Shown: positions 82-28,881 of the stretch, piece by piece | Layout of the letters: each line of letters begins with the position of its first letter | Position numbering within the stretch: position 1 is the stretch's first letter | Assembly: GCA_001938485.1 (NCBI GenBank) | Contig: MQRK01233198.1 | Span: 26,139-77,612, forward strand | Length of the DNA: 51,474 nt | DNA from: Girardia tigrina | Lineage: Eukaryota | Reading direction: 5' to 3' | Translations under genes and position numbers: made by a program | The notes under the pieces: model-generated | Database searches by the model: none | Seen by the model: the letters and a program-made list of their open reading frames with translations, nothing else | Told to the model about the DNA's origin: nothing

Positions 82-110
82 CTGTAACCCTACTTTTGGC
101 CCACCCTGTA
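82..110. mobile_element. Terminal end of a Tc1/mariner-type element that probably begins before the window
   Basis: The reverse complement reads TA-CAGGGTGGGCCAAAAGTAGGG, a typical Tc1/mariner TIR start with a TA target. No partner TIR is in the window. Confidence 0.45.
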
Positions 111-5822: not shown

Positions 5823-6248
5823 TAATAGCTGCTTATATCTATCAGTTTTTGTAAAAAAAGTTATTATCAAGTATATTAACTTTATTTTCTAGTTTTTGAA
5901 TGCCAACACAAAAGATGTAAATTATTAAACAAAACTCCAGTTACTATAATAATAATTATATCTAATTGTAAAATAAATTAAGTACATGTAAACATTTTGT
6001 TGGGTTCAATTCAATATTGTTTGTTTCCATACTATTAAATTAAAACGAAAGTTAAATTTAACTACGATCTCGATACGAAAAAATAGTAAGTCAAACTGTT
6101 TTCCAAGAATGAATTTCATACATCTGTTGATGGTAATTGTAAAAGAGCTAACTGAACCGGATGTTTCAATAACAAATTTTCAATAACTTTTTACAAATAA
6201 AATCAATAAATGAAACTATAAAAAATTAATTTTAATTTAGTTAAACTA

Positions 6249-7429
6249 CAGGGTGCGGCAGCTATTTGAGAACAAAATGACATAAAGTTCAAAAAATGAA
6301 TATACAACAGAAAAATAACATTTATTACAATTTAAAATTTTACATATATTAACACGTACNNNNNNNNNNNNNNNNNNNNNNNNNNNNNNNNNNNNNNNNN
6401 NNNNNNNNNNNNNNNNNNNNNNNNNNNNNNNNNNNNNNNNNNNNNNNNNNNNNNNNNNNNNNNNNNNNNNNNNNNNNNNNNNNNNNNNNNNNNNNNNNNN
6501 NNNNNNNNNNNNNNNNNNNNNNNNNNNNNNNNNNNNNNNNNNNNNNNNNNNNNNNNNNNNNNNNNNNNNNNNNNNNNNNNNNNNNNNNNNNNNNNNNNNN
6601 NNNNNNNNNNNNNNNNNNNNNNNNNNNNNNNNNNNNNNNNNNNNNNNNNNNNNNNNNNNNNNNNNNNNNNNNNNNNNNNNNNNNNNNNNNNNNNNNNNNN
6701 NNNNNNNNNNNNNNNNNNNNNNNNNNNNNNNNNNNNNNNNNNNNNNNNNNNNNNNNNNNNNNNNNNNNNNNNNNNNNNNNNNNNNNNNNNNNNNNNNNNN
6801 NNNNNNNNNNNNNNNNNNNNNNNNNNNNNNNNNNNNNNNNNNNNNNNNNNNNNNNNNNNNNNNNNNNNNNNNNNNNNNNNNNNNNNNNNNNNNNNNNNNN
6901 NNNNNNNNNNNNNNNNNNNNNNNNNNNNNNNNNNNNNNNNNNNNNNNNNNNNNNNNNNNNNNNNNNNNNNNNNNNNNNNNNNNNNNNNNNNNNNNNNNNN
7001 NNNNNNNNNNNNNNNNNNNNNNNNNNNNNNNNNNNNNNNNNNNNNNNNNNNNNNNNNNNNNNNNNNNNNNNNNNNNNNNNNNNNNNNNNNNNNNNNNNNN
7101 NNNNNNNNNNNNNNNNNNNNNNNNNNNNNNNNNNNNNNNNNNNNNNNNNNNNNNNNNNNNNNNNNNNNNNNNNNNNNNNNNNNNNNNNNNNNNNNNNNNN
7201 NNNNNNNNNNNNNNNNNNNNNNNNNNNNNNNNNNNNNNNNNNNNNNNNNNNNNNNNNNNNNNNNNNNNNNNNNNNNNNNNNNNNNNNNNNNNNNNNNNNN
7301 NNNNNNNNNNNNNNNNNNNNTAAGAGTAGCTTCTGCCATGTCTACCAGCAAAAATAAAATTATGTAATTATAACACACAAAAAGATATGGTGTCTATATT
7401 ACGTGTTCTCAAATAGCTGCCGCACCCTG
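6249..7429 (-). mobile_element. Tc1/mariner-superfamily element whose interior is an assembly gap
   Basis: Perfect 26-bp TIRs CAGGGTGCGGCAGCTATTTGAGAACA (6249-6274 and 7404-7429) with TA on both sides. Minus-strand MAEATL runs into the gap, so the strand is tentative. Confidence 0.85.
6360..7320. other. Assembly gap (other gaps: 20767-20816, 48416-48465, 48722-48935, 51014-51067)
   Basis: Runs of N. Confidence 1.
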
Positions 7430-7929
7430 TATATTAAAAATATAAAACTAACTGAAAAATCACAAATGTGCTTTTCACAGTGAAACAGGAACAAAGTTAC
7501 TTGTCAAATAATTGGGTCGTCAAATAACGGGTCTCAATAGTTTGAATAATTCGTATTGCAATTGCAAATATTGATTGAGTTCGAGAGAGATTCCTCGAGT
7601 TAGAAACAATTGCCGGGTTTAGTAGAATTGTTGTTATTGATTTGGACGACTGTCGATGACGATGAATGAGGATGGGAATTGATGGATTGACGTACGATAT
7701 TGAGAATATTGTTGTGAAATTGTTTTTGAATTATAATTGCTAAATGGTTTTCTGTTGATTGATTTGCAATTTGACTTTACTCTGTTCTTCGTTACACTAC
7801 AAATTTTGGTTTACGACAAAAGATCTCAATAAATCCGAGAATTGTTGCTATAATCGCTTATGGTTTATCGGTATCATATTGACATTTTTTATCGATAACA
7901 ATAATCGATTTTATTTATTCTATTAATTA

Positions 7930-7933
<4 letters not shown>

Positions 7934-7967
<34 letters not shown>
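7934..7967. repeat. (TA)n microsatellite; others at about 13490-13528, 18608-18645, 19316-19340, 19577-19612, 20718-20842, 24797-24831, 30720-30752
   Basis: Read directly. Confidence 0.95.
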
Positions 7968-7969
<2 letters not shown>

Positions 7970-9499
7970 CATATGTATGTATAAATATGTTAGTGACTGT
8001 AGGGCACTAAAGAAATAACAAATAAGGACTTAATCAAATAATTTCTAAATTAGTCGGCGGTAAGATTGATAAGAAAATGAATTATGTTGGTTCAAAAAAG
8101 AGACCCGAGTTTTCCGAAAATAGAGATACATAAGCTTGTATTTTGGTATCTTTGACCCTCTCAAACTGCATCCAAATAGAAGGCCATAAGCCTTCATTTG
8201 TACAAATGTTTCAATTTGTGAAGTGTGCATAGGACAACAAAAATAGCAAAATTTAATATATTTTCAAAACATAATTTTATTTATCATTATTTTAAAAAAG
8301 AGTTCCGTATATAACACTTTCCACAATTAAAAAACTCCTTCTGTGGTCTTCAAAATGGCCAACAAATAAAAGTAGTAAATCCTCTTAAATTTGGTTAATG
8401 TTGATTCAAATGCTCTCTTTCAACTCATGAAATACTGAATATTTCTTGGTACGCAATGTTCTTAAGATATTTCTATTTCTCAAAATCACAGTGGTTATGA
8501 TCAAAGAAGAGGGTACAAGTTAATTACGAACAGCATAAGTTACATGTGGTTATGTATAGTCTTATATAAAGATGATTACAAAAAAAAGATGATTTTACAA
8601 AAAGCAAAGAACTTTTCGGACTTCGTTTATACAGATAATTTATTTTAAATATACATTTACTTAGTTATTTTAATCACATTTCCACAATTTTTTATTTTGT
8701 TAATTTAAGTATTTTTAATTTCGTCTCCAAATGGAACTCCGTAAGCTCTTGTTTAGAAGGACAACCTCCAACTGTAAGCCCTAGGTTTGCCTCTAAACGA
8801 AAAATTCTGATAGTCATTTAATTTCAAATAAATGGAAAATGATATAGAAATACAATAAAAAATGCAAAAAGAATAATGGTAGAAGTGATGTTAAAATATT
8901 TGATATCCATTATTCATTTTTTATAACAGTGGTGACATGTCTTTTAAAAATATTTTTTTTATTTTCGAATAATAATAATTGAAAATTAGTAATTGATATT
9001 TAAATTTTAGATTTTTATGTCGAAAATTATTTGATTTTAGATACAATGGCATTATATGGCTACTACTTGTCTCTATGTCTTTTTCTTATAATTTTATTTT
9101 AAAAAGTTAAAATGTGTTTCATTTATTATTTAATATTTTGAACACTTTCCCAAAAGTGATGAGCATTTTCTAAATGATTTTAAATGTGTTATTTTTTTCA
9201 AATATTAACCGCTATAAAACAATTATAATTGCTGATAAATTTCAATTATATTAACATCAGACAATTGAAAAAGTAAGTCTAAAAGCTTACTTTTTAACTT
9301 ATCTTAACAGAGACCCTGAACAACGGTATTGGTTGGTAATGGTTGAATGATGATTCAGTAGAAATTATCTTGATCAATTATTAATACAATATTCCGATTA
9401 TTCTTTATATTATTAAAATTATATTTCCAAAATATCCTTAAAATAAATCTTGTTTTGTTCAGCATTTTTCTTGTCAAATTGGATATGTAAATTGTGTTT

Positions 9500-9760
9500 A
9501 CCTTCGATATCCGTCTAGTTGAAGATTAGGTTAGGATTTCTTCCTCACACTTGTCTGTAGGAGTGTTTTAGTAATGGTCTTAAAAACTTTGAAAATTCAT
9601 AAGTCACATAAAGCAAACAGGACAGTAGTTTTGACAAAATGTTCAAGAAATCCTTTAAAAATCTTATGAAAGTGCTCTTATTGTCACGAAAATTATGTCT
9701 TGTAAAGTCTTGAATCAATAATTTTAGTGAATAACTCAACTGGAGACCACTTTTGAAAGA
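9500..9760 (-). mobile_element. Possible highly decayed piggyBac-like transposase remnant
   Basis: Minus-strand fragments WSPVELF, NFRDN and KHSYRQV*GRNP resemble piggyBac motifs (SP.ELF, F.DN, RHS.KQ.I.GKP) in the right order but much compressed. Confidence 0.3.
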
Positions 9761-9946
9761 ACTAAAGAATAGAAGTGTTTATTGTTTTCTTTCTCTATTA
9801 CCTTCAACAAAATTATGTCATATTTAAAGTGAAGTTGAAAAAACTTGATAGCAATCATGTTCATAAAAATTTAATTTTTATATATGTAATAAAAATATAC
9901 AATGAAAAATGTAAATGACATTTAATTTCATTTTGAATTTTTTTGA

Positions 9947-10276
9947 AAATATATTTATTTCATTATTGGAACAATTAGCAAAACGAGTTAAAATTAACTT
10001 AATGAAACAAGTCACTTTTAAAAACCAATCAGCGGAGCGGTGCCTTGTTCGTACCCCTTGGGTTTACCCTGATGATAATAATAATTCATCATTTAAATTT
10101 TTTTGATCTAAATATGCGTTTTTTATTTAATAACAAAACGGTTATTATCATCAGGGTAAACCCAAGGGGTACGAACAAGGCACCGCTCCGCTGATTGATT
10201 TTTAAAAGTGACTTGTTTCATTAAGTTAATTTTAACTCGTTTTGCTAATTGTTCCAATAATGAAATAAATATATTT
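9947..10276. repeat. Long inverted repeat: 135-bp arms (9947-10081 and 10142-10276), 60-bp spacer
   Basis: The arms are reverse complements with a single mismatch found (aaaaCcaatc vs aaaaTcaatc). Confidence 0.97.
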
Positions 10277-11361
10277 AAACCAGGTTATATAAACCAATAT
10301 ATAAAGTTAATTTTTGTAGTTACATTGCACAATCAAATATTGTATTAACAAATTTCTCGCTCCAAATAAAAAGCATATTTTTCAAAATAAATCAAACGTT
10401 TTTACAAAGCAAGTTTCTATAATTCCATCTCTGAATCTTCTGATCTTGTGGCTTATTTTTTTAAAAAGATAAGGTTGAAAGTTATTGAATTTTCAAGCAT
10501 ACCATAAACAAAAAGCCTAACAATCGAATATTCAAATGTTGTTTCTATAAATTTCCCAACAATTGTAAAATAATAAAACTATAAAAAAATTATATAAAAC
10601 CGAAAATACAAAAAAGCAAATGATAAAATTATTTTAATCTTTTTTAAAAATAAAGCTCTTAGACCGCTTAAAAAACTCATATAATGTGAATAATTTGTTA
10701 CTTGTTTCATAAATTTACCACATTAACACTCATTTATGTTTTTTTATTATTTTCTCATGAGATTAATATGTTTTGTAAATATTTTTAGCAAAATATCATC
10801 AATAATTTGTTTAAAACATATTTTTATGAAGTACAAATTACAATGGTTTTTGTCGTTCAATTGTGTTTATATACACGTTAAAATATGCAAAATTGTCATT
10901 TTTTCAACAAATTTATAAAATAGTAATTTCCCCATATTTCGATCAAAATGATATTGAAAATACGGAAATAATAATGTTTTAAATCCATTTTAGCAGTATT
11001 GTTTAGATAAAGTATTGTTATAATTTAATTAATTGGTGGAAATATAATTTAGGTTTTTAACTTTTAAATTAATATTTTAGAACTTCTCGTAAATTTTAAA
11101 AATTGTTAAAATTATTTTGTAAAAGATATTATTTTCTATATTATTTTTCTGTACAGTATGTTGACATGAATATCAAACTCTTCATGTAACTTATTCATGT
11201 TGACTTTCTTCATATTTCCATTACCAATGTTCGTTCTGCTCTTTCAAAAAGAAATGTTTTCATCTTAATTTTTCAATTTGTTTCTTTATTGTTCGGTATT
11301 ATTGCTGTTTTTGCCGATTTTAATTTCCTCGGCCCTCTGATGGTCATTTCTTTCTGTCCCA

Positions 11362-11406
11362 TTGACCATGAATGTCTCCACAAATTTTTGTAGGTGCTGA
11401 AATTTC
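11362..11406 (-). pseudogene. Short PPP-family (PP1-like) phosphatase fragment fused behind the cyclophilin piece
   Basis: EISAPTKICGDIHGQ matches PP1 ELEAPLKICGDIHGQ (GDxHG metallophosphoesterase motif). Confidence 0.75.
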
Positions 11407-11433
11407 GTCGCACTTCATCTCAAAAATCTCGTC

Positions 11434-11638
11434 GCCAATAGGAATTCCATCTCTACGGTATTTGCCCGTACAGAATTTTACGAAAATTATCCGCAGTTTT
11501 CGGGACAATATTGGCAACAATATCGAACTGTATTCTGCCAATATCCTGACCACCAACACTGACATCGAAAAATACGACTGGATTTGACGAATTTCCCATT
11601 TGAGATTCAACAGCAGGTAAGACGATTTCTGCGGACAT
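11434..11638 (-). pseudogene. Cyclophilin (PPIH/cyclophilin-H-like) N-terminal fragment, frameshifted and intronless
   Basis: MSAEIV...NPVVFFDVSVGGQDIGRIQFDIVANIVPKTADNFRK, then a 1-nt insertion in the T4 run at 11476-11479, then FCTGKYRRDGIPIG, which matches the PPIH pattern FRQFCTGEFRKDGVPIG. Confidence 0.85.
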
Positions 11639-11984
11639 TTTTACACGATTATCTCCAAATGTCTTCATAAAATAATTCACATTAAAAATATAGCCAAAAG
11701 GCAAAGTAATCTGTTCTTTTAAATTAGACATTCAATCTCAAATAATGACAAGAAATCGATATTGCTATATAATATTTATTCGTTTTCAAAAATTACAATT
11801 GATTCGTTTAAACAAACGAATTTAAATTCAAAATATTCTAACAATATAAAAATTCTTATTCAACATATAACAATAAATATATACATATATCTATATATAA
11901 TTTTTTATTAAACATTTTTTTTACGTATATAAAATTTTTATTTTACAATTTTAATAAAAAATTTTAATTCATTCTGAAACAATT

Positions 11985-12210
11985 GCACTGTTTCACGATG
12001 TTTGATATCTTCGTTTTAAAAACACCAAGCTGCCTTTATATATCAGTAAAACGTTTTCCATGGTTGACTTTGTACATCTTTGAATCACACATTTCTGAAT
12101 CAAAAACATTACTTTTCAAAATGTTTAATTTAACAAAGAACTCGTGCTCCTTTTCCTTTACCACAGGTTTGGCCATAATTTTGGTCGAAGTCTTTCGTTT
12201 ATAATTTGAT
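11985..12210 (-). mobile_element. Possible pogo/Tigger (CENP-B-type HTH) N-terminal remnant
   Basis: KVNHGKRFTDI*RQLGVFKTKISNIVK resembles the HTH_psq pattern G...DIAR.FGV.KSTIS.I.K. Confidence 0.35.
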
Positions 12211-13485
12211 CGGTTTCTGATTCTCTGCCCAAATTTAAATTCATAAAAATATTTGCATAAATAGAGAATAAATAGTAAATTTGCATAAATAGTAAAGCGC
12301 AACGACTTACCACAAGGACGCACTTAAACAAAATTTTATTCCATAATAAAGCGATAAAATTTTTAGCTTATAAAATGCGCACTTAGTTTTATTTATCGGT
12401 CCAATAAAATGAATGTTAAAACATGATGGATTTCGATAAAACATCGTAATGATGACACTAAAATACCGTGTTTCTATTTTATTAACCTTTTTCTCATCAA
12501 CAAATTCTGTCTTTTTACACTTTTGCACCTATCAAGTTTTATAAATTTTAATTTTCATGAAAATGACTTTTTAATCGCTTGTGCGACTTCTCCGATGCAT
12601 GTACAAGTTGATATTATGAACGCCATTGAAATTCATCCACGGACTAATTTAATTTATAAAAATAAATAATTCATTATTATTTATTATTATTATTTGAAAT
12701 TTTATTGGTCGAGCAATGAGTTTTTATTTCATAACTTACGGTAATTCGAGTTTCAGATCAATTAGATTTAATTCAAATCTAATCTATTAATATTTTTCAG
12801 TTTTATACGTTAATAATAATAATTATTATTATGAGGTACAAATTAATAATTAAACTAATAAAAGTACATGAATTAAAAAAACAATTAACTGAATGGTTTT
12901 TTAAGACGGTTTGAAAATTTTTCTAATTACTAAATTAAAAAAATAATTGAAAACATCTCAGATAAAATTAATATTATAATTAAAAACCAGTACCAAAAAA
13001 AAGAGTAAAGTATTCCTGAGAATCAGTAGTGAACAAACATAAAAGAAAGTAGATAAGAGGAAAAGAAAACTATCTCAAACAGTCTAGCGTTATCTTTCGT
13101 CTGATTAGTACTAGATAAAAATGTAGCAGTCACGAATTTGCAACAATATTATTTTGAATTCATGGGCAAAGATTATGTGGGAGGAACCTCCAAACAGGCT
13201 TTGAATATCGGCATAGATTCTTGATTTTTTATCTACTTTCCTTCACAAATTGAAGGTTATGAACGTCAATAAAATACAATAATTATGCGATTGTGTAAAA
13301 GAACATCCAAATTATTTATTAATGATTTTCCTTTATCTACATTTATATATAATATATTATTCAATAATATATAACAATTATAAAATACAAATAATTTCCC
13401 ATACGAAATAATACAAGTAAAGAAATAAAAATAAAAGATTATGATGATTATAAAATATTATATGACAAACTTTAATTTAAAAAAT

Positions 13486-13530
<45 letters not shown>

Positions 13531-14374
13531 TTGAGTCTCCATTTTTTTCATATTTTTCTTTGTCTTTTGTTGGTAACATCCAATAAAATTCTGAAAATAA
13601 AGCAATTAATCAAAAATTTATATAAATATTGTGTGATAGAAAAATATTAATTAATCTCATTTATTCTCCGCTATTTTCATGTGCAAACGGTTTCAAAACT
13701 ATCGACTACGTGATTGATATATTTTAATCATTAATTCATGGTCACTCTTTGAACGCGGCACTTTCTTATTGTTATGAAAAGTCGTTTTTTTTTCTTGGTG
13801 CTTTTTTTGTCTAAGATCAAATATATTGTTTTCTATATTTTTAACAAAAAGAAATATTTAGTTAATCATTTTATAATTTTCAATAATTTAACAAAAATTA
13901 AAATGGTTATTTTTTTGAAAAAAATAATTCATAAAGAGATAAAATATGACAATACAAATGAATTGTCTTGCAAGTATGAGATAAGAAATGAAAGAGAACA
14001 CAAGGGCAATAATGACGGGCATTGTATTTCGTTTCTTTATTTCAATAATTTGAATTACTTTTTCTAATAAAAAAGGAAAATGGTTTGTTTTTAATTTTGT
14101 AGAATGATGATTAAATGGAAAAATAATCAATTCGAAATAACATTTTATTTAAATGAAAATGAAATGTAAATTGATTATTATATCTGATAAATTTAAAAAA
14201 TAATGGTAAATGTTTTTTTTTAAAAATTAAAATACGCCATTTTAAAATACAATTTTTTATTAGAGCAATATATTTCGACGAAATATCTGTCATCATCAGG
14301 CGATTCTAATTATAGCAGTTAAGTTTATATATGTTAAAATAATGATAAGTTGATGAGGTACTTGATTGGACATT

Positions 14375-14650
14375 AAATTCAGAATATGTTCAGTAATAAA
14401 TTGAAACTTCTTTGAGTTTATGCTCTGATCTTGTGTAAAAATTTGAGTGTAATGGGTGCAACGCCACATACATTGAAGAGACAGTCCGTCATTTCTGTAA
14501 ATGTGTTCGTGAGCATGGATATCTAAGTAGTTATAATATTGCTGAACATAAAAAACATTGTAAATCGTCTGTTGAAATAAATAATTTGAAAGTTTTATGC
14601 AGCAATTTTAAAAATTATTGATAAGAGTCTTGTATAAGGCATTGATAATT
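14375..14650 (+). mobile_element. Decayed Penelope-like GIY-YIG fragment
   Basis: Nucleotide similarity to 25602-25850 (tttgagtttatg...gtgtaatgggtgcaacgccacatacattg). Translates as V*KFECNGCNATYIEETVRHFCKCVREHG. Confidence 0.85.
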
Positions 14651-15779
14651 ATATGACTATTTTTTATTTTTTAACTTCAAAATTTAATTAAAATACAAAT
14701 TCGAAATTCTATGATATACATAGCGGTAATTATTTTCAAATTTAAACATGTTTTCTTTGATTTACTTTAATTTTTTGAAAATGATTTAATTTTAATTTTT
14801 TTAAAAATGACCTTTCATCAAACAATAAAGGCCCTTTTTCATTAAATTTATTTTCAAAATTAACCGGTTTCACCATTACAGTATTTGTAGTGTAATCCAA
14901 TAAAGTTGATAATAACTATTAATTTAGTTGATAAAATTTACATCATACATCTCAAGAACATACTTTTGAAATATTTTAATGTGATTTGAAGTACGTTTAA
15001 CCATGGTTTATGATGCTTTATTGAAAGTGTCTAATTTAATTAGCCTTGTAAATTCATCCCCATACTTTAATTGCTGAACACATTCAGTCGAGTAGAAAAG
15101 TTCTATTTTGTCAAATACCAAAAAATATTTTAAGGTGGTTATTAATAATAGTTATAAAAGTTATTTTAAATAATTTCGATTCAAATTCTAAAAGAATAAT
15201 TGTGCAAGCTGATTCTTCCAATCACATTAAAATATTAAAAAGCATGTTTTTTGAGCAATATGATGTAATAATTTTTCAACTAAATAAATAACAATTAATC
15301 ACTTTATTTTATTACACTGAGGATACCGTAATGATAAATCTGGTTTAGGTTTTTTAATAAAAAATAACGAAAAATACATTTTGATTTTAGTTTATTTAAA
15401 AAATCAAAGTAAATCATTATTTAAATTCTTTTTGGTGAGCAATACTCAATTTTAAAATGATATTAACTTTTCAATTAAACAAAATTATTTTAATTGATTT
15501 AAATCAAATCCATTATTTCATAATAAATTATTTTTTTGTTTTCAGTTTATTTTGTAAAAAAAATACTAATTGAAAATTTTGATGATGTGTAAAAATAACG
15601 TATTTCAATTCCTTTTTTATGTTATTATTTTTAGTAATATTATATTTCCAAAATGAATAAAACAAGTTACCATAAATTTTTCCTGCCAACTGAAAAGAAG
15701 GACAAAATTTATATTGTTAAAAAATACTAACTGTCTATTGTTTTTTTTATTATTTTATATACGGTAATCGTTTTTACTC

Positions 15780-16560
15780 TGCTCTATGTGGTGTCAACAA
15801 AGCCAGATTAACTCAAGTGGCGATGTCACAGTTACTATCTCGATAAATTCTGCATTCATCACCCCCAGAGACAGCTGACGGGCTATGACACTTTCTAATT
15901 GTGTTCTTAATACAATCTATAGAGGTGATTTTATATACTTTCTGTTTTGCGTACGTGTGTCTCTTTCTAAAATGCGCGTGTGAAAGACCGTGCGTGTGTG
16001 TGTGAGTGTGCACGGGTGTGCGTGGTACTTGTCTGTTTTCCTTCAGCTCTCTATTGAAATCTAGTTTTACTTTCTTTTCACACCTAACTGAACAATAGAT
16101 AGAAAGTGTTAGCTTTCACACTATGATGATACTCTCTATTGATTATAGAATGAAATTGTCACAGTACTGGTTCAAGGTTAACTGATTATTCTATTATCTG
16201 ACATTATATATCTCTCTCTCATTCTCTATTTCACTCTCTAGCAGCTACAGACTTTTTTTTCAAATTTATTTTAACAATACCATTATATTCCATTTTCAAT
16301 TTTTCTTTTTCTCTTGATAATGATAAAGCACAAATAAAAACGTGTTAAGCACACACAAAAATTTTTTTAGTCTTAAAAGCGAGAACTTTTTTTCATTGGC
16401 TTGTTTTAATTTTTGACACGTTCAATTAAAACAACAGCAACCAAACAACTAAACAAAAAAAATTTAAACCAAAAATTCGATAGTGAAATTTACTCTATAT
16501 TGTAAAAGTATGGTTGTCTGAAATTGGTGTGAAAAATTAATCACACATCTATTGTTGCAA
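15780..16560. promoter_or_regulatory. Putative upstream cis-regulatory module
   Basis: GC-richer non-coding island with TGTCA/TGACA at 15792, 15824, 15886, 16157, 16199 and 16414, a T-box half-site TCACACCT at 16078-16085, GGTGTGAA near 16526, and a (GT)n-like tract. Confidence 0.45.
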
Positions 16561-17149
16561 GTGGCGGAACTGCAATGAGAAGATAATTTCTTTGTTTTGC
16601 CAGAGATTATTGAAAGTCTTATACGCGTATTGATTTTTCGTTATTATTATTATTTTTGTAATTTTTTTCCTTTTATTCTTTTCTATTGCATAACTAATTA
16701 ATTATAGTATAAAACAAATTATCGTTTTTTAAAGAAATGATTAATGGCTGACTTTAGTGCATAGTTCAATTAAAACGAAAAAAAATTTCTTTACTTTTTA
16801 CTATTACTATTATTAATAATAAAAAGAATTTTTATTATCATAAAATAATATTTAACTAATTAAATAAATTTTTAATACAGAATTCATTTTGTGTGGAGAA
16901 TTTTATTTAATTGTGTTTGTTTTAATAGAATGTTTAAAAAAATAAAATGGCTTTTAAAACAATAAAAAATTATATTTTGTTTGAAGTGTTAAGCAATAAT
17001 TATAATTTTATCTATACTAACATTATTATTAATAATACTAGTACTACCATCAGTATTGATATATGTACAGGCGGTACTTGATGCTTATTTGAATGATCTA
17101 TATACACACAATTTTGTTTTGTTTTTTAAAAACCGATATCAATCTCCAT

Positions 17150-17500
17150 TTATATATAAATTGATGACTTGAAGCACCACATAAAAGAACGGTAAAAGCC
17201 TAAAAATCAGCTAATCGTTATTGAATGACGTGTGATAGCTGTCATTGCCACTTTTTTTCTCTCACGCTGCGTTCCGGTAGACTTGATGTTGTGACATAGC
17301 CAGTGTGCCAAATCAAATAAACCAGCTCTTTTCAAAAATATTTTTGAATAAAATAGTCACCCGGCTGCTGAAAATCTCTCATTTAATCTTGTTTATACAC
17401 ATTGACCGATTGGTGTTTGTATGTGTGCTGTAAAAGTTGTCACAAAATCGTCGAGAAAACTAAAACAAATTGGGCTGAAGTGTGGCTTTGTTTTAATAAG
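17150..17500 (+). promoter_or_regulatory. Putative proximal promoter region of the ZnF-PPC gene
   Basis: TATATATAAA at 17151-17160, followed by a GC-richer island with CTGTCA (17239), TGTGACA (17290) and TGTCACA (17438), 400-750 bp upstream of the first coding exon. Confidence 0.35.
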
Positions 17501-17902
17501 GACGATTGTAGAAGAAACTATTTAAACATCACTAGTTCACGAATAGAACAGAAAGTTTGAGCTTCGGTTCAATGAAACTCTTTGACGGGACAAAAATATT
17601 AACTTTATTCGAATTACAGCTGAAAAATAAGTGATGGTATTTTTTGATGAAAATGAAAGACAGTTCTTCAAATTCAAGATCAATAAATATTAAAAGAAGT
17701 TTTTTAAGTGAAATGTGTCGATTGCGCAACCACTGACTGCGTAATGTATAAAGGACCATATTTTTCAAAACTATTAATTGTTCCTTTGATGACTTTAAAT
17801 TGTCAAAATTAATTAACAACACAAAATATTTTAATGACATGCTATAAAACATTTATTTATTTGTATCAGATATATATATTTATTAATTATTTTAATAATT
17901 AG

Positions 17903-18132
17903 ATGAAAATCAACTACAAAACAAGTCAGAAAATCGATTCACTAAAATCTTTTTCCAACATCAAATCTTCAAATGATGAAAAATCAGTAATTAATCCGAA
18001 ATCTAAACTCAAGTCAACGACAATTTCTGATAACAATAAACCATTTAATACGTGGTCGAATTCGAATTTCAACAATCGAATATTAGCATCATCCAACAAA
18101 TCCTTTCATGATTCACTTTACAACCTTAACGG
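17903..18132 (+). CDS. ZnF-PPC gene, coding exon 1 (Ser/Asn/Lys-rich)
   Basis: ATG directly follows an AG. The frame is open to GG|GTATAC (phase 2), which matches the 1-nt overhang of the next exon (GG+A = Gly). An upstream exon may exist. Confidence 0.6.
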
Positions 18133-18399
18133 GTATACATATTTTATAATATATATTATTATTATTATTAATATTGGGACAAATAAAAATGGTACTTAAA
18201 TTAGTACAAAATTAATTTTGTATTTCATGAGAAATTTATGGTAAATTATAAAATCATGGAAAAAAAATCTTTTTTGTCGTTTGATTGATAGATATTTTAT
18301 TGATAATAATAATAATAAAAATGGATAATAAATAAGATAAAAGTAAAACTAATTCACAATGGATAATTTCACAATAACTCGAACGGATTTGATATTTTG

Positions 18400-18604
18400 A
18401 ATGGCTTCTGACAAATGAGGCGAATCGTGTTGATATTTTCACGTACTGTGACAGACACCGTGTTAGAACAGTCGCAGAACCTTTCTAATAATACAAACAC
18501 ACACATACAAACACACTCAGTGACAGTTAAGGCCTTACAGTGATGCGTCGTAGAATTCGATTTATAAAACAAAATAAAAAAAAGATTGCAGTATTCAATC
18601 CTTG

Positions 18605-18648
<44 letters not shown>

Positions 18649-19080
18649 TCACCACATATTTCCACACTAGTTAGTAATTATAAGTGCGCGATCAATAAAG
18701 TTTCCATGTCTCCTGCGTCAATATTTATCGGATAGATATACATATATGCCTCAGTAATAGCAGCCTGTATGTCTGTGTGATATATTCTTGTGTCTGTGTG
18801 TATGCTGAAAAGTAAGGGCAGATCGTCTACTGACTGTAGACTGACTGGCGTCGCTTTGCTTATTGTATGTGTGTGTGTCGGTTTGCGTGCTACTGGTAGA
18901 AATTGAACGGTAACTGCTTTTCTAACTGACGGAGCATTATACTATTGCTTTGTATTTTTATTCTTTTATTTCTGTTCGTTGTCGATATGCCGACGAGGTG
19001 TGTTTTAATTAAATAATAAATTAAAAGAACGTCCAATAATCTTGTGGAAATATTACAAATATATTCATTGTGACAGATTT
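18400..19080. promoter_or_regulatory. Putative intronic enhancer (intron 1)
   Basis: GC-richer non-coding island with TGACAG at 18449, 18521 and 19071, TGACA at 18409, and CA/GT tracts. Confidence 0.4.
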
Positions 19081-19574
19081 TTGCCTGGGAAAAACAATTA
19101 TTAGTTATATTATTTTTATTTATTTTTTGTCAAAAAAAATAAATAAATAAAACTACGAGAGATATTAAAAATCATAAAATTTAAAAATAGGAACTGTTAG
19201 GTTTTGGTGTTTTTTTTGTTGGATTATAAATTAGTTTTTATTTTCGATTTTATTAATCAGTTACTGGTTTTAATGGATAATTTCAAATTAGATTTGATGA
19301 ATTTATTTTTATATTTATATATATATATATATATATATATTTTTAAGGGATGTGTGATGGGGTTTATTTTTGTGGGGAAATTCATTAGATTTTTTTAATA
19401 GAGATTTTTTTATTTAATTATTAGTGATTAGTTTTAATATTGATTAATTTATATTATAAAATGCCGAATATTTTTTATATAATTTTTATTAATGACAAAT
19501 TGTTTTGATCAAAATAATGTCTTTCAAGCAAGTAAATTTATTAGTTATTACAAAAGGTGATTACATAATCATCG

Positions 19575-19616
<42 letters not shown>

Positions 19617-20713
19617 ACTAAAATTATTGTTAATGAAGCTTGAAGATGTTGCAAAATATACGACATATATTGCTAAAATAAATTTAACTTGTTTGAATGG
19701 TGTTAATAATTTTTATTAAATCTATTATTTTCTATTTTTATTAACGTTTTAAAATGATGCATATAATATGACATTTTATAAAAATTTAATTTAAAATTTG
19801 GTGCAGATTCTCACTTTCAAAGTACTATACGGTGTACGGCGTCAATCGTTCTTATACCTTGAATTGATATTATATATTATATGCAACGGTTTAGTTAACA
19901 TTTCATATATTTATATAAAGGTACAAATATTACAATTTGAATACCCTTTAAAATAATATTAATATAAATAAATATTTTTTAAGTAACAATATTAACTATT
20001 TTTAGATATTTTAAATACATAAATTTAATAGGAAGAAATAAAAATTTTTTTAAAAAAATATCCAATAAATGTTTGAATGGGAAATTGATCTACAAAAGAT
20101 AGGAATGATTCTTGAAATATAAAACAACAATAAATGTTAAATAATTTTTGAATTTCTTAACTGATTATCAATATCTTTTGTATTATTAGATTTTTTGATA
20201 TTATATATCAATATAAATAATATTACAATATATATTCATAAAATTTGGATAATCGATTTATGTTAAATAAAAAGGAGTATAGTTAAAGACCGCTAATATA
20301 ATTATATGATCCGTACTTGTGTTCAATGGGATTTATTTTTTCTTTTATGATTATTATAAAATGATATTAATAAAATTTAATATCTAAATTTCATATTATT
20401 ATTAAAGTTTGTTAATTGTGCTTTTATTTTATAATAAAAATATTAAGTTAATTATTAATTAATTTTCTATTATTATTAAAAAATAATAATAATAATATTA
20501 ATTATTATTATTATTTTCATATTGATTTTCGGAAAAGAAAAAGCCATATCCGTTTTTATCTGATTTCGGTTTTTATAAAGATTATTAAAAGTATTGATTA
20601 CATTAAAAAGATAATTAATGGTGAATTTTCTCTCAACGAATTTTATTTATTAATAAGTTTTTAATATTAACGAAAAATGAAATAATAAAAATCTTTATTT
20701 AATAAGGATTTAA

Positions 20714-20766
<53 letters not shown>

Positions 20767-20816
20767 NNNNNNNNNNNNNNNNNNNNNNNNNNNNNNNNNN
20801 NNNNNNNNNNNNNNNN

Positions 20817-20847
<31 letters not shown>

Positions 20848-21386
20848 TATATATTTATATATTTCAGATTTTTGAAAATATTTCTTCTATAAATGTTAAA
20901 TTAAAATTTTATATTTATTAACCAGAAATACATCTGTAGTAGAGAAAAAAATAAATAAATGATTTAATAAAAACTTTAAGAATTTCTTTTCTTGTCATGG
21001 GGATTATATTTGATTGATTTTCATTTTGTTTAAAAAAATATTATCTCTTACTTATATTTTACTCAGTAAACACGAAAAATAGAACCATTAAATTTTTAAA
21101 ATAGATGATTTTTTAATTTGTTAAATCTAATATTTATAATTCAATAAAGGTTCTGTTTGATCATAATTTGATCTTAATTGTATTCATCATTTATTAAAAA
21201 TAAATTGACCAACTTAAGTAAAATAAACTAAATATTTATGTTGTGAGCCTTTGAATCTACCATTTTTGATTTAGTGAAACCCTTTATCTTTATTTGTTAA
21301 TTAATTTGCATTTCATGAAAAGTTTCCTAATATTCGATTAAAAATATATTTCGTAAAGAGTTAAAGTTGAAACACGTGTATTTTAG

Positions 21387-21690
21387 ATCGTCTTGCCTAA
21401 ATCTTATTCAATCAATGCCTATGATCAGTAAGTGCCCATTGTGCCTTGAAGATTGTTCTCAAAATGGAGTGGACAATAGCAACACTTTTAATCGTTTAAT
21501 GAATCACATGCAACAAAAGCATCCAGAAAAACTACACAACTCGAATACGTCTTTCGACCTCTTAGGTGGATCAACGACCAATGGTATAGTTCAATCCTTA
21601 CTGATGCCACCAACAACTAGTAATATCAACTATATGTCGGTTTCGAATGCCATTTCGAGTGCAAATATGATTTCATTTCTTTATTACCAA
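21387..21690 (+). CDS. ZnF-PPC gene, exon 2 (C-x2-C-x20-H-x4-H, BED/Di19-like finger)
   Basis: TATTTTAG| acceptor and CAA|GTAAGG donor (phase 0). Encodes KCPLCLEDCSQNGVDNSNTFNRLMNHMQQKHPE. Confidence 0.8.
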
Positions 21691-23610
21691 GTAAGGTGTT
21701 GTATAATATATTTTTACAATATTTATCATATTCATGTTATTTAAACTACATTAATGTCTCATTTAATTATTCATTTCGCGTAGATTTGAGTAGGAGTTTC
21801 ATATTTTTATCATGAATAAACCATTTTACTTATTTTGAACTCGCATAATCAGAAACTGTATAGCAAAGATGATGAACATATTTTTTTGTTAGAAAATTCT
21901 CTCATAATTTTATAACATGCATACATTAATAAACTTCGTTGGTAATCTTTATAGTAAAAAGAAGATTGAAGGTTTGTTAAATGTTAGGTCCTTATCAGAA
22001 CAAGTTTTGCAAGAGAGCCACTGCATCCAAGTGGACAAGAAACAAGCACCAACACGAATTCTCAAAAGCACAATCTTCTACCGAGCATCTTTATTACTTC
22101 GAGCAATAGAGATAGCGGTAAAGTGGGTGTGAAAATTCATTTGATGAGAATTTTAAGACGATATAAATACACTTTAAAAATAAATATTTTTCAAGCAAAT
22201 TCCCACGAATTTTGAAAATACCTAACTACGTATATATAATCAACTTTAAGAATCATTTACTAAGCTGATATTTCGAAGTTGTAATTAGTAAAAGTTTGAC
22301 TTTTAATTTACATTAGAATTTGTACTTTAAAAAAAGATATTTGGAAAATTTTATTATATATTATTTTTTTTAATATTATTTAGGGAAACATAAAAAAAAC
22401 GAATAATTCTTAAAATATCGAATTATCATTTTCTAGTCTCCTAATAAAAAAAGTTTTTTTTTATTTTTTTTTAATTTATAATATTTTACAGTTATCGTAT
22501 TGTCATTGTTGCAATATCTATAAACCTTTTTCTTCGAGACACGGTCTAATTTGCTTTTCAATGAACATTAGGTGACTGTCAATGTGTTCTGTCCCGGGTA
22601 AATCGACGCCAGAAACCCGTTGACAGTCGTGCTATTATTTGATCAAATTCCTAAGTAACATTTTATAATTAATTTCATAGACAATTTCTGCTGTTAAATT
22701 AAAAAATAAATTTGTCACAACAATTTATTATAAGTATTAAAAAGACAACAACAATATCTACAACAATTTTTTTCTAGTTATTTTATTAATATCTTATTAT
22801 TATTTAATATTTAATTTTGTATTGAAATTTCGAGAATTTCTGTTAATTATTCATTTTTTTTAAATTCCATTGTAAAGATAAAGTAAAAATGAATAAATAG
22901 AAATTTTAGCTGAAGTTAGAACTTAATTTGGTAGAATGTAACGTGAATTAACAATAAATGACTCAAAATTAATTATCGTATTGAAGATAAATTATTATAA
23001 TTGTGATGATAAAATCGGAATTTTATATTTAACTATTCCCCATTTTGAAGAGGATTCGGAAAAGTTGAATCATTCTAGTTTTTAAATATTATCAATATTT
23101 TAATGAAATAAGACTGAAAGAATGTCCAGTAATATATCTTCCAGATGTTGCTTGGGTTTTGACCAGTACCAAGACTTTAATGGGTACATTCTCGCCCAGA
23201 CTAATAAAAACTAGTTCAAATACTGAATATTTTTAGGGCTGCTAATTTCAATAAAAATGAATCTTACATGAATTAATATTCTCTTTTATGTTTCATGGGA
23301 CATTTAGATTCCAGGTTCCTTTGCAGGTATTATTATATTCACATGAATCTGGATATATAATTTCTGAAGAAAGTTTCTAACGCCTGAAAGAAAAAAGCTA
23401 TTTTTGACGTTAAACTTTGAACCAAAATTGCACATCATAAATAGGTAAAGATTTCTTATTTAGTGCCATATCACAAATATGTAAATGATTCACATCCAGG
23501 AGCGTTAAAAAGCTTTTAATTCCTTTGATGATATTTTATTTATCATTTAATTATATTTTATGATTTGCGACATTTTTAATTTTATTAATTTTTTATAATG
23601 ATATTTTTAG

Positions 23611-24018
23611 GATCTAATGCGTCAAACAATTTCTACTAATCGATCTTCTAATTCCCAATTTAGTTCAATATCCTCTGACCCTATGTTTTTACAGTCACCC
23701 TCTGCCTTAGCCACATCTTCTATTTACCCAATACTTTCTCCTCCGTCACCACAATATTCTTTGAGACCATCAAGTTCCAGTATTTCCGCGTTCAATTTGA
23801 ATTCAACAAATGATAACGTTATTCCAAACCCATTAACTATGAAAGAAACTAATCATATTTTTAATAAAATTTCCCCATTGAAAAGAACAAAATTTTCCGC
23901 CGAATCATTTATTTCAGATTCTTGTTCCCAATCAGCCTTTTATTCTCCAAAATGTTGCAAAATTGATTCTAAAGAAGCCGATGTACTAAAGTCAATCAAA
24001 AACAATTTATCTCATCAA
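23611..24018 (+). CDS. ZnF-PPC gene, exon 3 (Ser/Pro-rich; PLKRTK basic patch; FSAESFI eh1-like)
   Basis: ATATTTTTAG| acceptor and CAA|GTAAAA donor. 408 nt open, phase 0-0. Confidence 0.8.
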
Positions 24019-24793
24019 GTAAAAAAATTATTTATTTATTTAATTTAGTCCCTGTTTTAATTAAATGATGCATAATTTTGATATAAAGATTTTTTTATTG
24101 CACATAAAACCGGGTTTTAAGTTTTGATTTCATAACCATATGCGATTTTTGAATGAGCAACCTAAAATGTATAATCGAATCCATAATAAATAATTATGGG
24201 TGGTCAGTTTAGAAACCTTTACTATGTTCAATTTTTCATTACTGATCAACCACCGAACAAACTACCGAAGATCAAAAGTCACAAATTATTGATTAAATTT
24301 TATTGGATTAAAAATATAGAAAATTATAATAAACTGATAAATTTTGATTAAAATATTTATTTTTCAATTATTCTGAATGTTAAAATGAAAAGAAATTTTA
24401 GCCTTAAAAATTATTATCAATCTTTTGAAAAGGATTTTGAAAAATGATTATTTTTAAAAAATGTTTTTTATGAAGATTAGTTTATGAAATTCTTCAGATA
24501 ACCTTTGAAATGAAAGATAACAATCAAAGACCTTTGCTGCTTTAATAGTTTAGTGAAACGTTGAGAACATATTCAATCAACACAACTTGATTCATATTAC
24601 ATTATATGTAAAATGAATACATATATTATATATGTTAATATATCCTTTTTATATATTTTTTGTTTCAATTTCAACGGAATTTGTGAAGGAAAAAAATTGT
24701 ATTTTTCAAAAATATCTTACTCTATATATACATGAATGATCACGTAGTTATCAAATTATACAGTTATTCAAAAACCTTTCAAATTGTAAAATA

Positions 24794-24836
<43 letters not shown>

Positions 24837-24899
24837 TAATAAGAAATTTAAAAAATAATGGCAATGTTTTATAATCAAAAACGCCTTTAAAATCAAATT

Positions 24900-24958
24900 T
24901 TATTGTCGCAATATATTTCGGTGGATTTTCCACCATCTTCAGGCTGAATTAACAACAA
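24900..24958 (-). ncRNA. Minimal type-I hammerhead ribozyme motif (Penelope pLTR)
   Basis: Exact reverse complement of 25966-26024. Confidence 0.75.
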
Positions 24959-25965
24959 TTTCGTTGTCTTATATATAGCAACTTGACGATTATGTAAACC
25001 TCTTGCGTAATAATTAATTAAATATTTTCAACGAATTGGAAGAGATACTTGTTTGGACATTAATGAACGGATTAAGTGATTTAATCAAAAATGTCTCACA
25101 CATAACTCTATCCAAATAATTTTTAAAATTACCGCACAATCTTTTAAAATTAGTTGTTTTCACCTTCGATTTACAACCCTTCATATGTCCAGTAATATTA
25201 CTCCCATTATCCAATCGTCCATGCACCTGACTCCGTTTACAGAGATGACGAGACGTCTCTCCAATGTATGTAGCGTTGCACCCATTACACGAAAATTCAT
25301 AAACCAGATTTCAACATAAACTCAAAGGAGTACGAGATTTATTGCTGAACTTTGAATTTTGTAAGATTTAGAAATGATTTTTAAATTCAAATTTTTACTA
25401 TCGATTGATTTTAAAATAGACGATTTAAATTTTTTGCAACCTTCTGAATAAGGAACGATTAGCGTATATCCAATATTTGAATTTTCATTAGATAATTTAT
25501 CGGGTTTTAATTCGTCTTTACCCTCATGTTTTTTATTCATTAATATATCTATCGTCTCATTAGTTAGTTTCTCTAAAAATTATTTCGAATAGCCATTTTT
25601 TAGTTTATGTTCCAATCTGGTTTATCAATTTTCGTGTAATGGATGCAACGCTACATATATTGGAAAGACGTCTCGTCATCTCTGTAAACGGAGTCAGGAG
25701 CATGGACGATTGGGTAATGGGAGTAATATTACTGGACATATGAAGGGTTGTAAATCGAAGGTGAAAACAACTAATTTTAAAATATTGTGCAGTAATTTTA
25801 AAAATTATTGGGAAAGAGTTACTTGTGAAGCATTATTGATTAAATCACTTAATCCGTCCATTAATGTCCAAACAAGTCTCTCTTCAAATTTGTTGAAAAT
25901 ATTCAATTAGTTATTATGCAAGATGTTTGCATAATCGTCAAGTTGCTATATATAAGACAACGTAA

Positions 25966-26024
25966 TTGTTGTTAATTCAGCCTGAAGATGGTGGAAAATC
26001 CACCGAAATATATTGCGACAATAA
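25966..26024 (+). ncRNA. Minimal type-I hammerhead ribozyme motif (Penelope pLTR)
   Basis: CUGAAGA-U-[GGUGG AAAAU CCACC]-GAAA-UAUA-UU: conserved core, 5-bp stem II, 1-bp stem III with a palindromic UAUA loop, and stem I GC/GC plus UUGUUGUU/GACAAUAA. TATATATAA lies upstream and AATAAA overlaps the 3' end. Confidence 0.75.
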
Positions 26025-28179
26025 AATTTGATTTTAATGGCGTTCTTGAATATATATATTATATATGAGTTTGTGTAAAATGAATTATTTGCTATTATAA
26101 TTTATGAAGTCAAAAATATTTTAATTTAATTAATACATTACGTGATGGTAAAACCGTTACATTCATAATATAAATTTTAAATTGCAAAAACACTTTTGTT
26201 TCGAATAACAATGAAAAAAGTATAATTGTATTAATATAGATATAACTTTTTTAAAAAAATATCATATTTAAAATTTTTATAAAACTAAAGCAAATAAATC
26301 GAAACATTCGTTCTACAAACGGATCGGTTATATGGTAAATTATTATTCATTATTTTTTGTTAGATTTTGAGTTCATAGTTTAAACATATTTATTATCATT
26401 TTAAAACGATTATGTTACTATAACATATTGTGTATATTATAAATCGATAAATAGTAATAAAATGTTACTTTCAAAGATCAACAGAATGAATATAACTGTG
26501 TTATGAAACATATACGTATAAATAATAAGTTATTAATTTCTGAGAATGATCTTTTTCTATATCTTTGTTATTTAACCTCTTCTAATTGCTCTGGGAATTG
26601 AAATAATATTCTTTACGTGATTTTCATACATTTGTGTATTATTTTTTTAACGTTCCTAGAGAGTAAATAAACACCTCATATTTGAATTCGTTTTTAACAC
26701 TCTTCGTTCCGCTTCAGAATCGAATGATCCACATCAAACTTTCTTTTAGACCGCTGAACATTTTGGCTCTAAAACACTCAACATGATAAGATACTTCCTG
26801 CTATCATGCGTTGGTATGTTAGCATAAAATGTAGTGTAATAGTGAGACTTTGAGTCACTTTGAAGCGTGGACCCACGCAACGCAGTGACAATGGTTTATA
26901 TACTTTATAAGAATGTCATCATTAAACGTCTCTATTAGGAAAAATTTAAAGAAAATTTTTCAGTCATTATTTAAATTTTTATATGTTAAATTTTTGATGT
27001 TAAATAATATGTTATAATTCATCAAGTTTAGTAAGAAAGCCTGATAAAATACTTATATTAAAATATTTTTAAAACGGTTAAGGCCTATGTAAAAAGCTAA
27101 ACAACTAACCCTTAGTGATCTCAATTATGGGTTCATATTAGTTAACATGTCCAGGTCTTTAAATTTTAATATCTCGTTTAATTTGAGTCATTATACTGAA
27201 ATCCTTAAATCAATCTATTATATCAGCATACAACATCCTTTAATTTTGAGCTTAAAGTTTCAAAAAAGATTTCATCTAACATATAAACCAGTACGGAAAC
27301 CGTTAAAAATATTTCTCAAATTTTGTTTAATACAGTTATTGTTTCTATTTTACGTTGCATTTTGTACGCTAAAGTTTCATTTTGATAAGAATTAGCTTTG
27401 TAATTTTTAAATTCATATAAAATATATTTTATGTAACTAGAATGGCTTTTGTGCGACACGGGCCACCGGTGTCCCCCGCTGTTTGGATGATGTGTCACGC
27501 TTATTCTGCACAGTGTGGACGCGTTAAAATGTTTAGTACATTACTTAACGTGAAAGTTCTGTTATAAGTAAAAACAATAAACGTTTTCTATTTTTTTAAC
27601 AGATAGTGGTCTAAATTTATTTGCAATATTTTAAATTCAATTTCTGATTTAAATTAAATCAAAATAGAAATTAAAATTAAATAAATAGTAAATTCTTAAA
27701 ATCATTAAGATAATGTCTTAGAAAAATAAATTTTATTTAAATCTATTAACTATAAAATCATTATTAAAAATAATATTAAATTATAAATTGATTAAATTTA
27801 AAAAAATAAAATTTTAAACTAAGAAAAATATTTTTATATTTCATTCTAAATTTAGTGAAAAATAATTAAAAATTATTCCTTAATTTGAAACATAAATCAA
27901 TATGAAAATACAAATAAATTATAATTTCATATAACGTGTTTCAGTTTTGTTTTAATTTGTCATTTTTGTTCTCACGGAAAAATAAAGATTAAAAAAGTAA
28001 AAAAAATATTATTAATAAAAATAATTTTTCAAACAGATCAAATTGAATTATAATGTATTATATTACCATTTTATTTATTGATTTAATATTATAATAATTA
28101 TAAAATAATTTCAACTTAAATTCTTTCATCAACAAAAATTTAGTTAATATTATTAATAATTGTTTTTATTAAATCATAG

Positions 28180-28527
28180 AATTCTGATGTTCAAAAATTC
28201 CAATCAAATGAAATCGAATTAAATAACAAAGATATAAAAACCGAAAATATAGTCGATTCTGTTATTGATAATAGTAAACCCTCATCGAATGTCTTATTAA
28301 CATCGAGTCCATACAATGATAATTGCGTAACACCAAAATCATCAGCCCAAGGAAACCTAACTTGCCATGCTTTAAGGTTTGGTCCTGGTCAAGATTTAAA
28401 GGCGGGTTTATTGGAATATGTGAAAAAGAAAAAGATTAGTGCAGCATTCATCATGACTTGTTGCGGTAGTCTTAATCAAGCAAAACTTCGAATGGCTGAT
28501 TCAGGAATGTCCAATTCGCCGTTAGAG
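28180..28527 (+). CDS. ZnF-PPC gene, exon 4 (linker plus N-half of PPC/DUF296)
   Basis: CATAG| acceptor and GAG|GTAATA donor, 348 nt open. Encodes HALRFGPGQDLKAGLLEYVKKKKISAAFIMTCCGSLNQAKLRMA. Absent from the ORF track because it has no early start codon. Confidence 0.92.
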
Positions 28528-28629
28528 GTAATACTTACTTTCAGATGTTTTTATTAAGCAATTTCAATTTTCATAAATTTATTACTAATATAACTATGTA
28601 TCAATGTTATATTCTATATACAACTACAG

Positions 28630-28881
28630 ATAAAAAAGTTCACCAAGCATTTTGAAATCGTTTCACTGGTTGGATCGGTGTTTGATCACGACTGTCACCT
28701 TCATATATCCCTGTCAGACAGTAATGGCAATGTTATTGGAGGTCATGTCATTGGTGACCTAATAATACATACGACTGCTGAAGTGATGATCGGACAAATT
28801 TGTGGAGTACAAATGTGTAGAGAACCTGACGAGAATACTGGATATTCCGAATTATCATTCTCAACAACAGATATTATTTAA
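28630..28881 (+). CDS. ZnF-PPC gene, last exon (C-half of PPC/DUF296)
   Basis: Follows a 102-nt GT-AG intron. Encodes FEIVSLVGSV...HLHISLSDSNGNVIGGHV...HTTAEV...REPDENTGYSEL and ends at TAA. AATAAA at 29047-29052. Confidence 0.95.
   Translation: MKKFTKHFEIVSLVGSVFDHDCHLHISLSDSNGNVIGGHVIGDLIIHTTAEVMIGQICGVQMCREPDENTGYSELSFSTTDII

What the first reader, a model, noticed from the sequence alone, without database searches (positions are those of the whole stretch)
17903..28881. Candidate novel regulator: zinc finger, eh1-like motif and PPC/DUF296 domain in one 513-aa protein
Seen: five GT-AG exons whose phases (2,0,0,0) join into a single 1542-nt open frame. The PPC exon at 28180 has no Met until after the domain's first strand (ALRFGPGQDL), so it needs an upstream exon, and the nearest convincing coding exon (23611-24018) ends in a phase-matched donor. 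Known: PPC/DUF296 is a trimerising domain, usually stand-alone in prokaryotes and animals but fused to AT-hooks in plant AHL chromatin regulators. Inference: this lineage may have independently attached PPC to a nucleic-acid or protein-binding finger plus an NLS-like/corepressor region, giving an AHL-like trimeric regulator. I do not recall this architecture having been described.
Basis: partly seen in the sequence, partly recalled or inferred. Interest (0 to 1): 0.85.

Follow-up and report, generated by a model that had tools for sequence, protein, structure and literature searches.

The report
Flatworm transposon-finger–PPC fusion gene
This is a real, spliced, single-copy flatworm gene that joins zinc fingers to an ancient three-part metal-binding module (PPC); it probably also carries a transposon-type finger encoded further upstream, which would make it an animal parallel of the plant AHL chromatin regulators that flukes also appear to have.

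Summary
The fusion is real. Contigs from four studies splice 24018 to 28180 and 28527 to 28630, and one shows exon 2 joined to exon 3. The 513-aa model is probably truncated at its 5' end. Three runs hold 1318-1340 nt upstream of exon 3, and the model explains only 534. Three phase-matched exons lie 11-12.5 kb upstream of the window on the same contig. They add 719 nt and a Kozak ATG, leave 65-87 nt unexplained, and give about 741 aa. They encode a Spin-doc (hAT-transposase-type) C2H2 finger, Pfam PF18658 above cut-off. It is 73-75% identical to a finger lying 7-10 kb upstream of the PPC exons in two flukes, with shared intron positions. The link from these exons to 17903 crosses two assembly gaps and is not read-tested (about 80% likely). 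The PPC keeps the His-x-His...Gly-Gly-His metal triad and lacks the AHL GRFEIL motif, so this is not an AHL. Best reading: a trimeric nuclear regulator, possibly ligand-sensing; function untested. I found no description in papers or in earlier scan notes.

The parts
1..17902 (+). Inferred long intron (it continues 11.1 kb upstream of the window). It links the window's exons to three exons OUTSIDE the window on G000:C233198: A 13631-13932 (Kozak ATG at 13666, first half of the Spin-doc finger), B 14032-14176 (finger core C-x2-C-x14-H-x4-H), C 14752-15023 (linker, strong phase-0 donor). It holds transposon remnants and a 961-N gap at 6360-7320.
   Evidence: Inferred from phase, transcript length and fluke gene order; exon B PF18658 33.2 bits against cut-off 27.3; junction not read-tested
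17903..18132 (+).
   Evidence: junctions not read-tested
20767..20816 (.). Assembly gap (50 N) between (TA)n runs, intronic; not filled
21387..21690 (+). Exon 2, with a second putative finger C-x2-C-x20-H-x4-H (about 21430-21522) and a conserved hydrophobic C-terminal stretch
   Evidence: 85% identical to a homologous exon (L008) with the same splice sites and all four ligands kept; zf-BED 16.2 bits, below cut-off 20.6; 3' junction seen in X1
23611..24018 (+). Exon 3; Ser/Pro-rich, probably disordered, with a conserved block holding an NLS-like KRTK next to an SP site and the 'eh1-like' heptapeptide
   Evidence: both junctions seen in contigs; 80% identical to P0073, with the block invariant
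24870..26054 (.). Intronic fold-back repeat (457-nt arms, 93% complementary) with GIY-YIG remnants; spliced out
28180..28527 (+). Exon 4; linker plus N-terminal half of PPC
28630..28881 (+). Exon 5; C-terminal half of PPC with the His triad, and the stop codon
28882..29081 (+). 3' UTR; contigs end at 29012-29081
   Evidence: table 8

Best explanation
One single-copy flatworm gene of at least 8 coding exons spanning about 41 kb encodes a protein of about 741 aa: an N-terminal Spin-doc C2H2 finger, a low-complexity linker, a second, lineage-restricted C2H2-like finger, a Ser/Pro-rich region with an NLS-like motif, and a C-terminal PPC domain. SHOWN: exons 2-3-4-5 are co-spliced; the PPC is single copy; the exons are under purifying selection; the Spin-doc finger lies upstream on the same strand here and in two flukes. 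INFERRED (about 80%): exons A-C splice to 17903. INFERRED mechanism: the finger was captured from a hAT transposase before triclads and trematodes split. The PPC trimerises, as solved prokaryotic PPCs and AHLs do, so three fingers on flexible linkers bind repeated DNA sites with avidity, and the disordered middle recruits cofactors. The intact His triad would bind a metal ion and may bind a small ligand, which would make this a ligand-tunable trimeric transcription or chromatin regulator.
For: Junctions in 4 runs from 4 studies. Transcript length upstream of exon 3 is 1340, 1332 and 1318 nt; exons A+B+C+1+2 give 1253 nt, all phases match, and there is a Kozak ATG. The alternative 806-nt contiguous leader would hold 13 upstream ATGs. 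The fluke finger's best match in 1.43 Gb is on this contig and strand, E 5e-17. Finger-to-PPC order is the same in Echinostoma (9.8 kb) and Paragonimus (6.9 kb), with three shared phase-0 intron positions, although synteny between planarians and flukes is reported as not conserved (PMC11410931). PF18658 occurs at 150 or more places in this genome; in the one tested case a weak hAT dimerisation match follows (E 3e-4, just under cut-off). Atlas look-alikes are GTF2IRD2/FAM200/ZBED5-type. 13 of 17 strain differences in exons 3-5 are synonymous. PPC trimers and the AHL model: PMC4209074.
Against: No read evidence for C->17903 or 18132->21387. The 29-kb intron crosses two N gaps of about 1 kb that could hide exons or a mis-join. 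Public annotations split the halves in both flukes and in another species' models (P0073, P0001). No finger was found within 15 kb upstream of the PPC exon in Heterobilharzia. The PPC tree neither groups nor excludes planarian plus flukes (p-AU 0.43). Fold matches of the finger are weak and led by RNA-binding fingers (TUT4 Z 5.2), with BED fingers at Z 2.6-2.9. There are no data on localisation, DNA binding or oligomer state.
Confidence: 0.5

Rival explanations
1. Same single gene, but the fingers bind RNA or protein rather than DNA. The product is a trimeric RNA-processing or scaffold factor.
For: The best structural matches of the Spin-doc finger model are the fingers of TUT4/7, ARS2/Serrate, TUT1 and spliceosomal proteins. 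Isolated single C2H2 fingers often bind RNA or protein (general knowledge).
Against: All structural scores are below the informative range. By sequence the finger belongs to a transposase-associated family.
Confidence: 0.17
2. Same single gene, but the PPC acts mainly as a metal-dependent enzyme (the ancestral housekeeping role of the genome's only PPC) and the N-terminal part only localises it.
For: The His triad is intact here, in flukes and in 76 of 85 PPC proteins retrieved. It is the only PPC in the genome. C11orf54 uses a three-His zinc site as a beta-keto acid decarboxylase (PMC12337341); that PPC shares its fold is from my own knowledge.
Against: No activity for any stand-alone PPC was found in the papers searched. 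The 24-residue C-to-H finger core is identical between this genome and two flukes, so it is more constrained than the PPC (about 50%).
Confidence: 0.13
3. One reading: a 513-aa protein starting at 17903 behind a long 5' UTR, with the Spin-doc exons as a separate neighbouring gene (or as an alternative-promoter isoform).
For: There is an in-frame ATG at 17903. GC-richer promoter- or enhancer-like stretches lie at about 15.8-16.6 kb and 17.2-17.5 kb. The paralogue on C247793 shows that this finger can exist in a gene without PPC. Annotations are split.
Against: The ATG sits at an acceptor. Exon C's strong donor has no other good coding partner. The length arithmetic fits to within 65-87 nt. The order is the same in two flukes with compatible phases.
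Confidence: 0.17
4. Artefact or read-through of two unrelated genes.
For: Runs are only guessed to be RNA and are assembled contigs.
Against: Exact GT-AG skips in four studies; one contig covers exons 3-5; unique intron stretches are nearly uncovered; no intronless PPC copy exists in the genome.
Confidence: 0.03

Closest known systems
Plant AHL (AT-hook motif nuclear localized) proteins
   Same: Nucleic-acid-binding module N-terminal to a C-terminal PPC; probable trimer and nuclear role (PMC4209074).
   Different: No AT-hook; zinc fingers instead. No GRFEIL (KHFEIV here). His triad kept. Single copy, in an animal; independent origin inferred.
Stand-alone PPC/DUF296 proteins (Vibrio VCA0587 2p6y, Salmonella 2hx0, Pyrococcus PH0802 2dt4; mollusc and fish 'GlmU-like')
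   Same: Same domain (exon 5 against 2p6y E 1.6e-15; about 60% to mollusc PPCs), His triad kept.
   Different: Those are 130-150-aa single-domain proteins; here about 600 aa of fingers and linker precede the domain.
Host-transposase fusion genes (GTF2IRD2; Cosby et al., bioRxiv 10.1101/2020.05.07.082677) and Spin-doc-finger hAT transposases
   Same: A transposase-type finger joined to a host domain and kept under selection.
   Different: Only the finger is kept, with no transposase core. The partner is PPC. The event appears to predate the triclad-trematode split.
C11orf54/BKG decarboxylase and acetolactate decarboxylase
   Same: Three-His zinc site of His-x-His...His type; shared fold per my own knowledge.
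   Different: Different family and spacing; no activity is shown for PPC.

Membership tests
PPC/DUF296 (PF03479) | Profile match above the curated cut-off | tested here: met
   34.6 and 59.2 bits for the two exons against 25; 94.6 bits genomic
PPC/DUF296 (PF03479) | His-x-His...Gly-Gly-His triad of stand-alone members | tested here: met
PPC/DUF296 (PF03479) | Homotrimer | not testable with these tools
   monomer prediction only; the joined model was left out
AHL | AT-hook (Arg-Gly-Arg core) | tested here: not met
   absent from the translations of all eight exons
AHL | [quoted passage not shown] | tested here: not met
   KHFEIV here, GPFEIV in flukes; definition in PMC4209074
AHL | PPC C-terminal to a DNA-binding module | tested here: inconclusive
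   the order is met; DNA binding is untested
Spin-doc zinc finger (PF18658), upstream exons A-B | Profile match above cut-off | tested here: met
   exon B alone 33.2 bits against 27.3; intronless paralogue 44.7 bits
Spin-doc zinc finger (PF18658), upstream exons A-B | Co-transcribed with the PPC exons | tested here: inconclusive
   phase, length and synteny support it; no junction reads
BED finger (PF02892), exon 2 | Profile match above cut-off | tested here: not met
   16.2 bits against 20.6; no aromatic lead-in residues upstream of the cysteines
C2H2-type finger, exon 2 | Four conserved zinc ligands and a folded finger | tested here: inconclusive
   ligands invariant in L008; AlphaFold pLDDT 43; no significant profile match to Spin-doc, E 0.28
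eh1 Groucho-binding motif | F-S-I/V-x-x-I-L/M consensus (from my own knowledge) | tested here: not met
   strict pattern absent; a loose pattern occurs in 1.7% of shuffles; the block is invariant in P0073
Host-transposase fusion gene | Transposase-derived domain spliced to a host domain, low copy, conserved | tested here: inconclusive
   finger family is abundant here and in one case next to a weak hAT match; two host-type copies conserved with flukes; direction of capture not tested

The most novel reading that the evidence does not exclude
Flatworms independently evolved an AHL analogue: a captured hAT-transposase zinc finger fused to their only PPC domain, conserved from planarians to flukes. 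It forms a trimeric, sequence-specific regulator whose intact metal pocket senses a metabolite, with no counterpart found in the vertebrate PPC hits. It has been missed because annotations split the gene.
Probability: 0.3. Interest if true: 0.85.

Novelty: new variant of a known kind. Interest (0 to 1): 0.62.

Why it matters
It would be a second, animal origin of the 'DNA-binder plus PPC trimer' design known from land plants, and an old case of transposase-finger capture outside vertebrates. Planarian RNAi makes the function of an animal PPC domain directly testable; I found no established function for one in the papers searched. The gene is single copy and mis-split in public fluke annotations, so it is probably missing from transcription-factor catalogues. 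If flukes need it, it is a flatworm-restricted regulator worth knowing.

Tried and rejected
The joined 513-aa and 741-aa models were not searched or folded; all searches were exon by exon or used natural proteins. No full-length homologue was found in the protein collections. The metagenome scan gave one 1-kb contig of the intronless paralogue type, without PPC. AlphaFold of exon 2 was unusable. Foldseek of the Spin-doc finger gave nothing significant. PPC trees were unresolved. Exon 2's finger as a duplicate of the Spin-doc finger is not supported. A similarity between the paralogue's exon end and exon 2's end gave no tblastn support. Rfam found nothing in 15-30 kb. Paper searches and three supplement searches found no flatworm PPC gene. 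Rejected: a separate first exon for PPC; AHL membership; BED membership; the eh1 label.
Full report
Observation. Exons 4 and 5 match the two halves of PF03479 above cut-off, and the family has one copy in the 1.43-Gb genome. The 50-N gap lies between (TA)n runs in the intron after exon 1 and touches no exon. It was not filled. The joined protein was not searched or folded; all searches were exon by exon.

Transcript test. Four runs from four studies were laid on 23300-29200. They are guessed to be RNA and are held as contigs. Each has one contig that covers exons 3, 4 and 5 and skips 24019-28179 and the last intron at GT..AG. In X1 the loose end before 23611 is the last 30 nt of exon 2. Unique intron stretches carry only low-depth pieces. 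Of 17 strain differences listed in exons 3-5, 13 are synonymous. A homologous exon 2 from another sample keeps both splice sites and all four putative zinc ligands at 85% identity. P0073 spans the exon 2/3 junction in another species at 80% identity.

The model is short at its 5' end. The contigs of X14, X6 and X7 have 1340, 1332 and 1318 nt before exon 3, and exons 1 and 2 supply only 534. The ATG at 17903 directly follows an AT-rich tract ending in AG. A search with exon 4 returned fluke PPC proteins with long N-terminal extensions. Their loci hold, on the same strand 7-10 kb upstream, an exon for a Spin-doc zinc finger whose core is identical in Echinostoma and Paragonimus. The best match of that exon in this genome is on the window's own contig and strand, 12 kb before the window starts (73%, E 5e-17). 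Three exons lie there: contig 13631-13932, 14032-14176 and 14752-15023. They open with a Kozak ATG, are phase-matched to each other and end in a strong phase-0 donor that fits the phase-0 acceptor at 17903. Together with exons 1-2 they total 1253 nt, leaving 65-87 nt for the transcript start, and they give 741 aa. Among phase-0 acceptors in the intervening 29 kb, 17903 has the longest open frame. The phase-0 introns before the finger core, before the linker-PPC exon and inside the PPC are shared with the flukes. Synteny between planarians and flukes is reported as not conserved (PMC11410931), so a kept order is better explained by one gene than by two neighbours. Against this: the junction is not read-tested, the intron crosses two N gaps of about 1 kb, public annotations split the halves, Heterobilharzia shows no finger within 15 kb upstream, and the PPC tree is uninformative. 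I put the link at about 80%. The organism is inferred to be a triclad flatworm from these identities; this was not verified.

The domains. Exon B alone passes the PF18658 cut-off. That family has at least 150 matches in this genome; the few opened look like transposase remnants, and one is followed by a weak hAT dimerisation match. Atlas look-alikes are of the GTF2IRD2/FAM200/ZBED5 type. Only two copies are of the fluke-like type, this one and an intronless paralogue on C247793. A model of the paralogue's finger (pLDDT 82) is a hairpin-helix C2H2 finger with only weak structural matches, to RNA-binding fingers and to BED fingers. The 'eh1' heptapeptide fails the strict consensus, although it sits in a block with an NLS-like KRTK that is invariant in P0073. 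The PPC is of the stand-alone type: closest solved relative Vibrio VCA0587 (E 1.6e-15), His triad intact here and in flukes, and no GRFEIL.

Mechanism. The most likely reading (0.5) is a nuclear trimer in which the PPC clusters three transposase-type fingers for avid DNA binding and the disordered middle recruits cofactors. The metal pocket may be a ligand sensor. Trimerisation is inferred from prokaryotic PPC structures and AHLs (PMC4209074). DNA binding is inferred from the finger's family. The pocket idea rests on the three-His zinc site of C11orf54 (PMC12337341) and on my recollection that the folds are shared.

Comparison and novelty. It may work like an AHL but fails two defining AHL features, so it is not a member. 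It resembles host-transposase fusion genes but keeps only the finger. No paper or earlier scan note describing this architecture was found; the paper library is incomplete. Long PPC proteins in a sea urchin and a whelk hint at other fusions, unverified. Verdict: a real, apparently undescribed domain architecture, probably shared by planarians and flukes, with function untested. New variant of a known kind; interest 0.62.

Noticed in passing
G000:C247793:17252-17656 (L034:1357-1761): Paralogue of the Spin-doc finger with no intron inside the finger. A similar sequence occurs in a metagenome contig (L046, 57% to exon B, with a similar exon end), so it looks like a second conserved host gene without PPC.
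   Followed up: partly
window 24870-26054: Fold-back repeat with 457-nt arms at 93% and GIY-YIG remnants in intron 3. Related repeat copies are very deeply covered in all four runs. No Rfam match at gathering score.
   Followed up: partly
P0077 (Lytechinus variegatus XP_041467838.1) and P0225 (Nucella lapillus): Animal PPC proteins with unrelated N-terminal parts; P0077 has an ALS2CR8 domain above cut-off. These may be further independent fusions or annotation errors; no loci were on record.
   Followed up: partly
L009, L011, L012 (fluke PPC exons): Fluke PPC domains carry a 15-55-aa insertion before the last strand and share a short L-S-P-x-W motif upstream of the domain.
   Followed up: no
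window 11344-11731, minus strand: Intronless, frameshifted patchwork that reads like cyclophilin N-terminal and protein-phosphatase fragments (by eye; no Pfam hit at E 0.01). It may be a chimeric processed pseudogene inside the long intron.
   Followed up: partly
window 15800-16600, 17200-17500, 18380-19000; contig 17500-17800: GC-richer stretches with GT/CA repeats flanking exon 1 and in the long intron; they look like enhancers or alternative promoters.
   Followed up: no
window 10006-10088 and 10142-10233: An inverted pair of about 85-90 nt separated by about 50 nt (hairpin or MITE-like), seen by eye.
   Followed up: no
window 4724-5749, 30225-30542, 42241-42495, 43438-46944, 49694-51442: Mariner/Tc1, LINE-like and Gypsy-like remnants, judged from their translations.
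   Followed up: no
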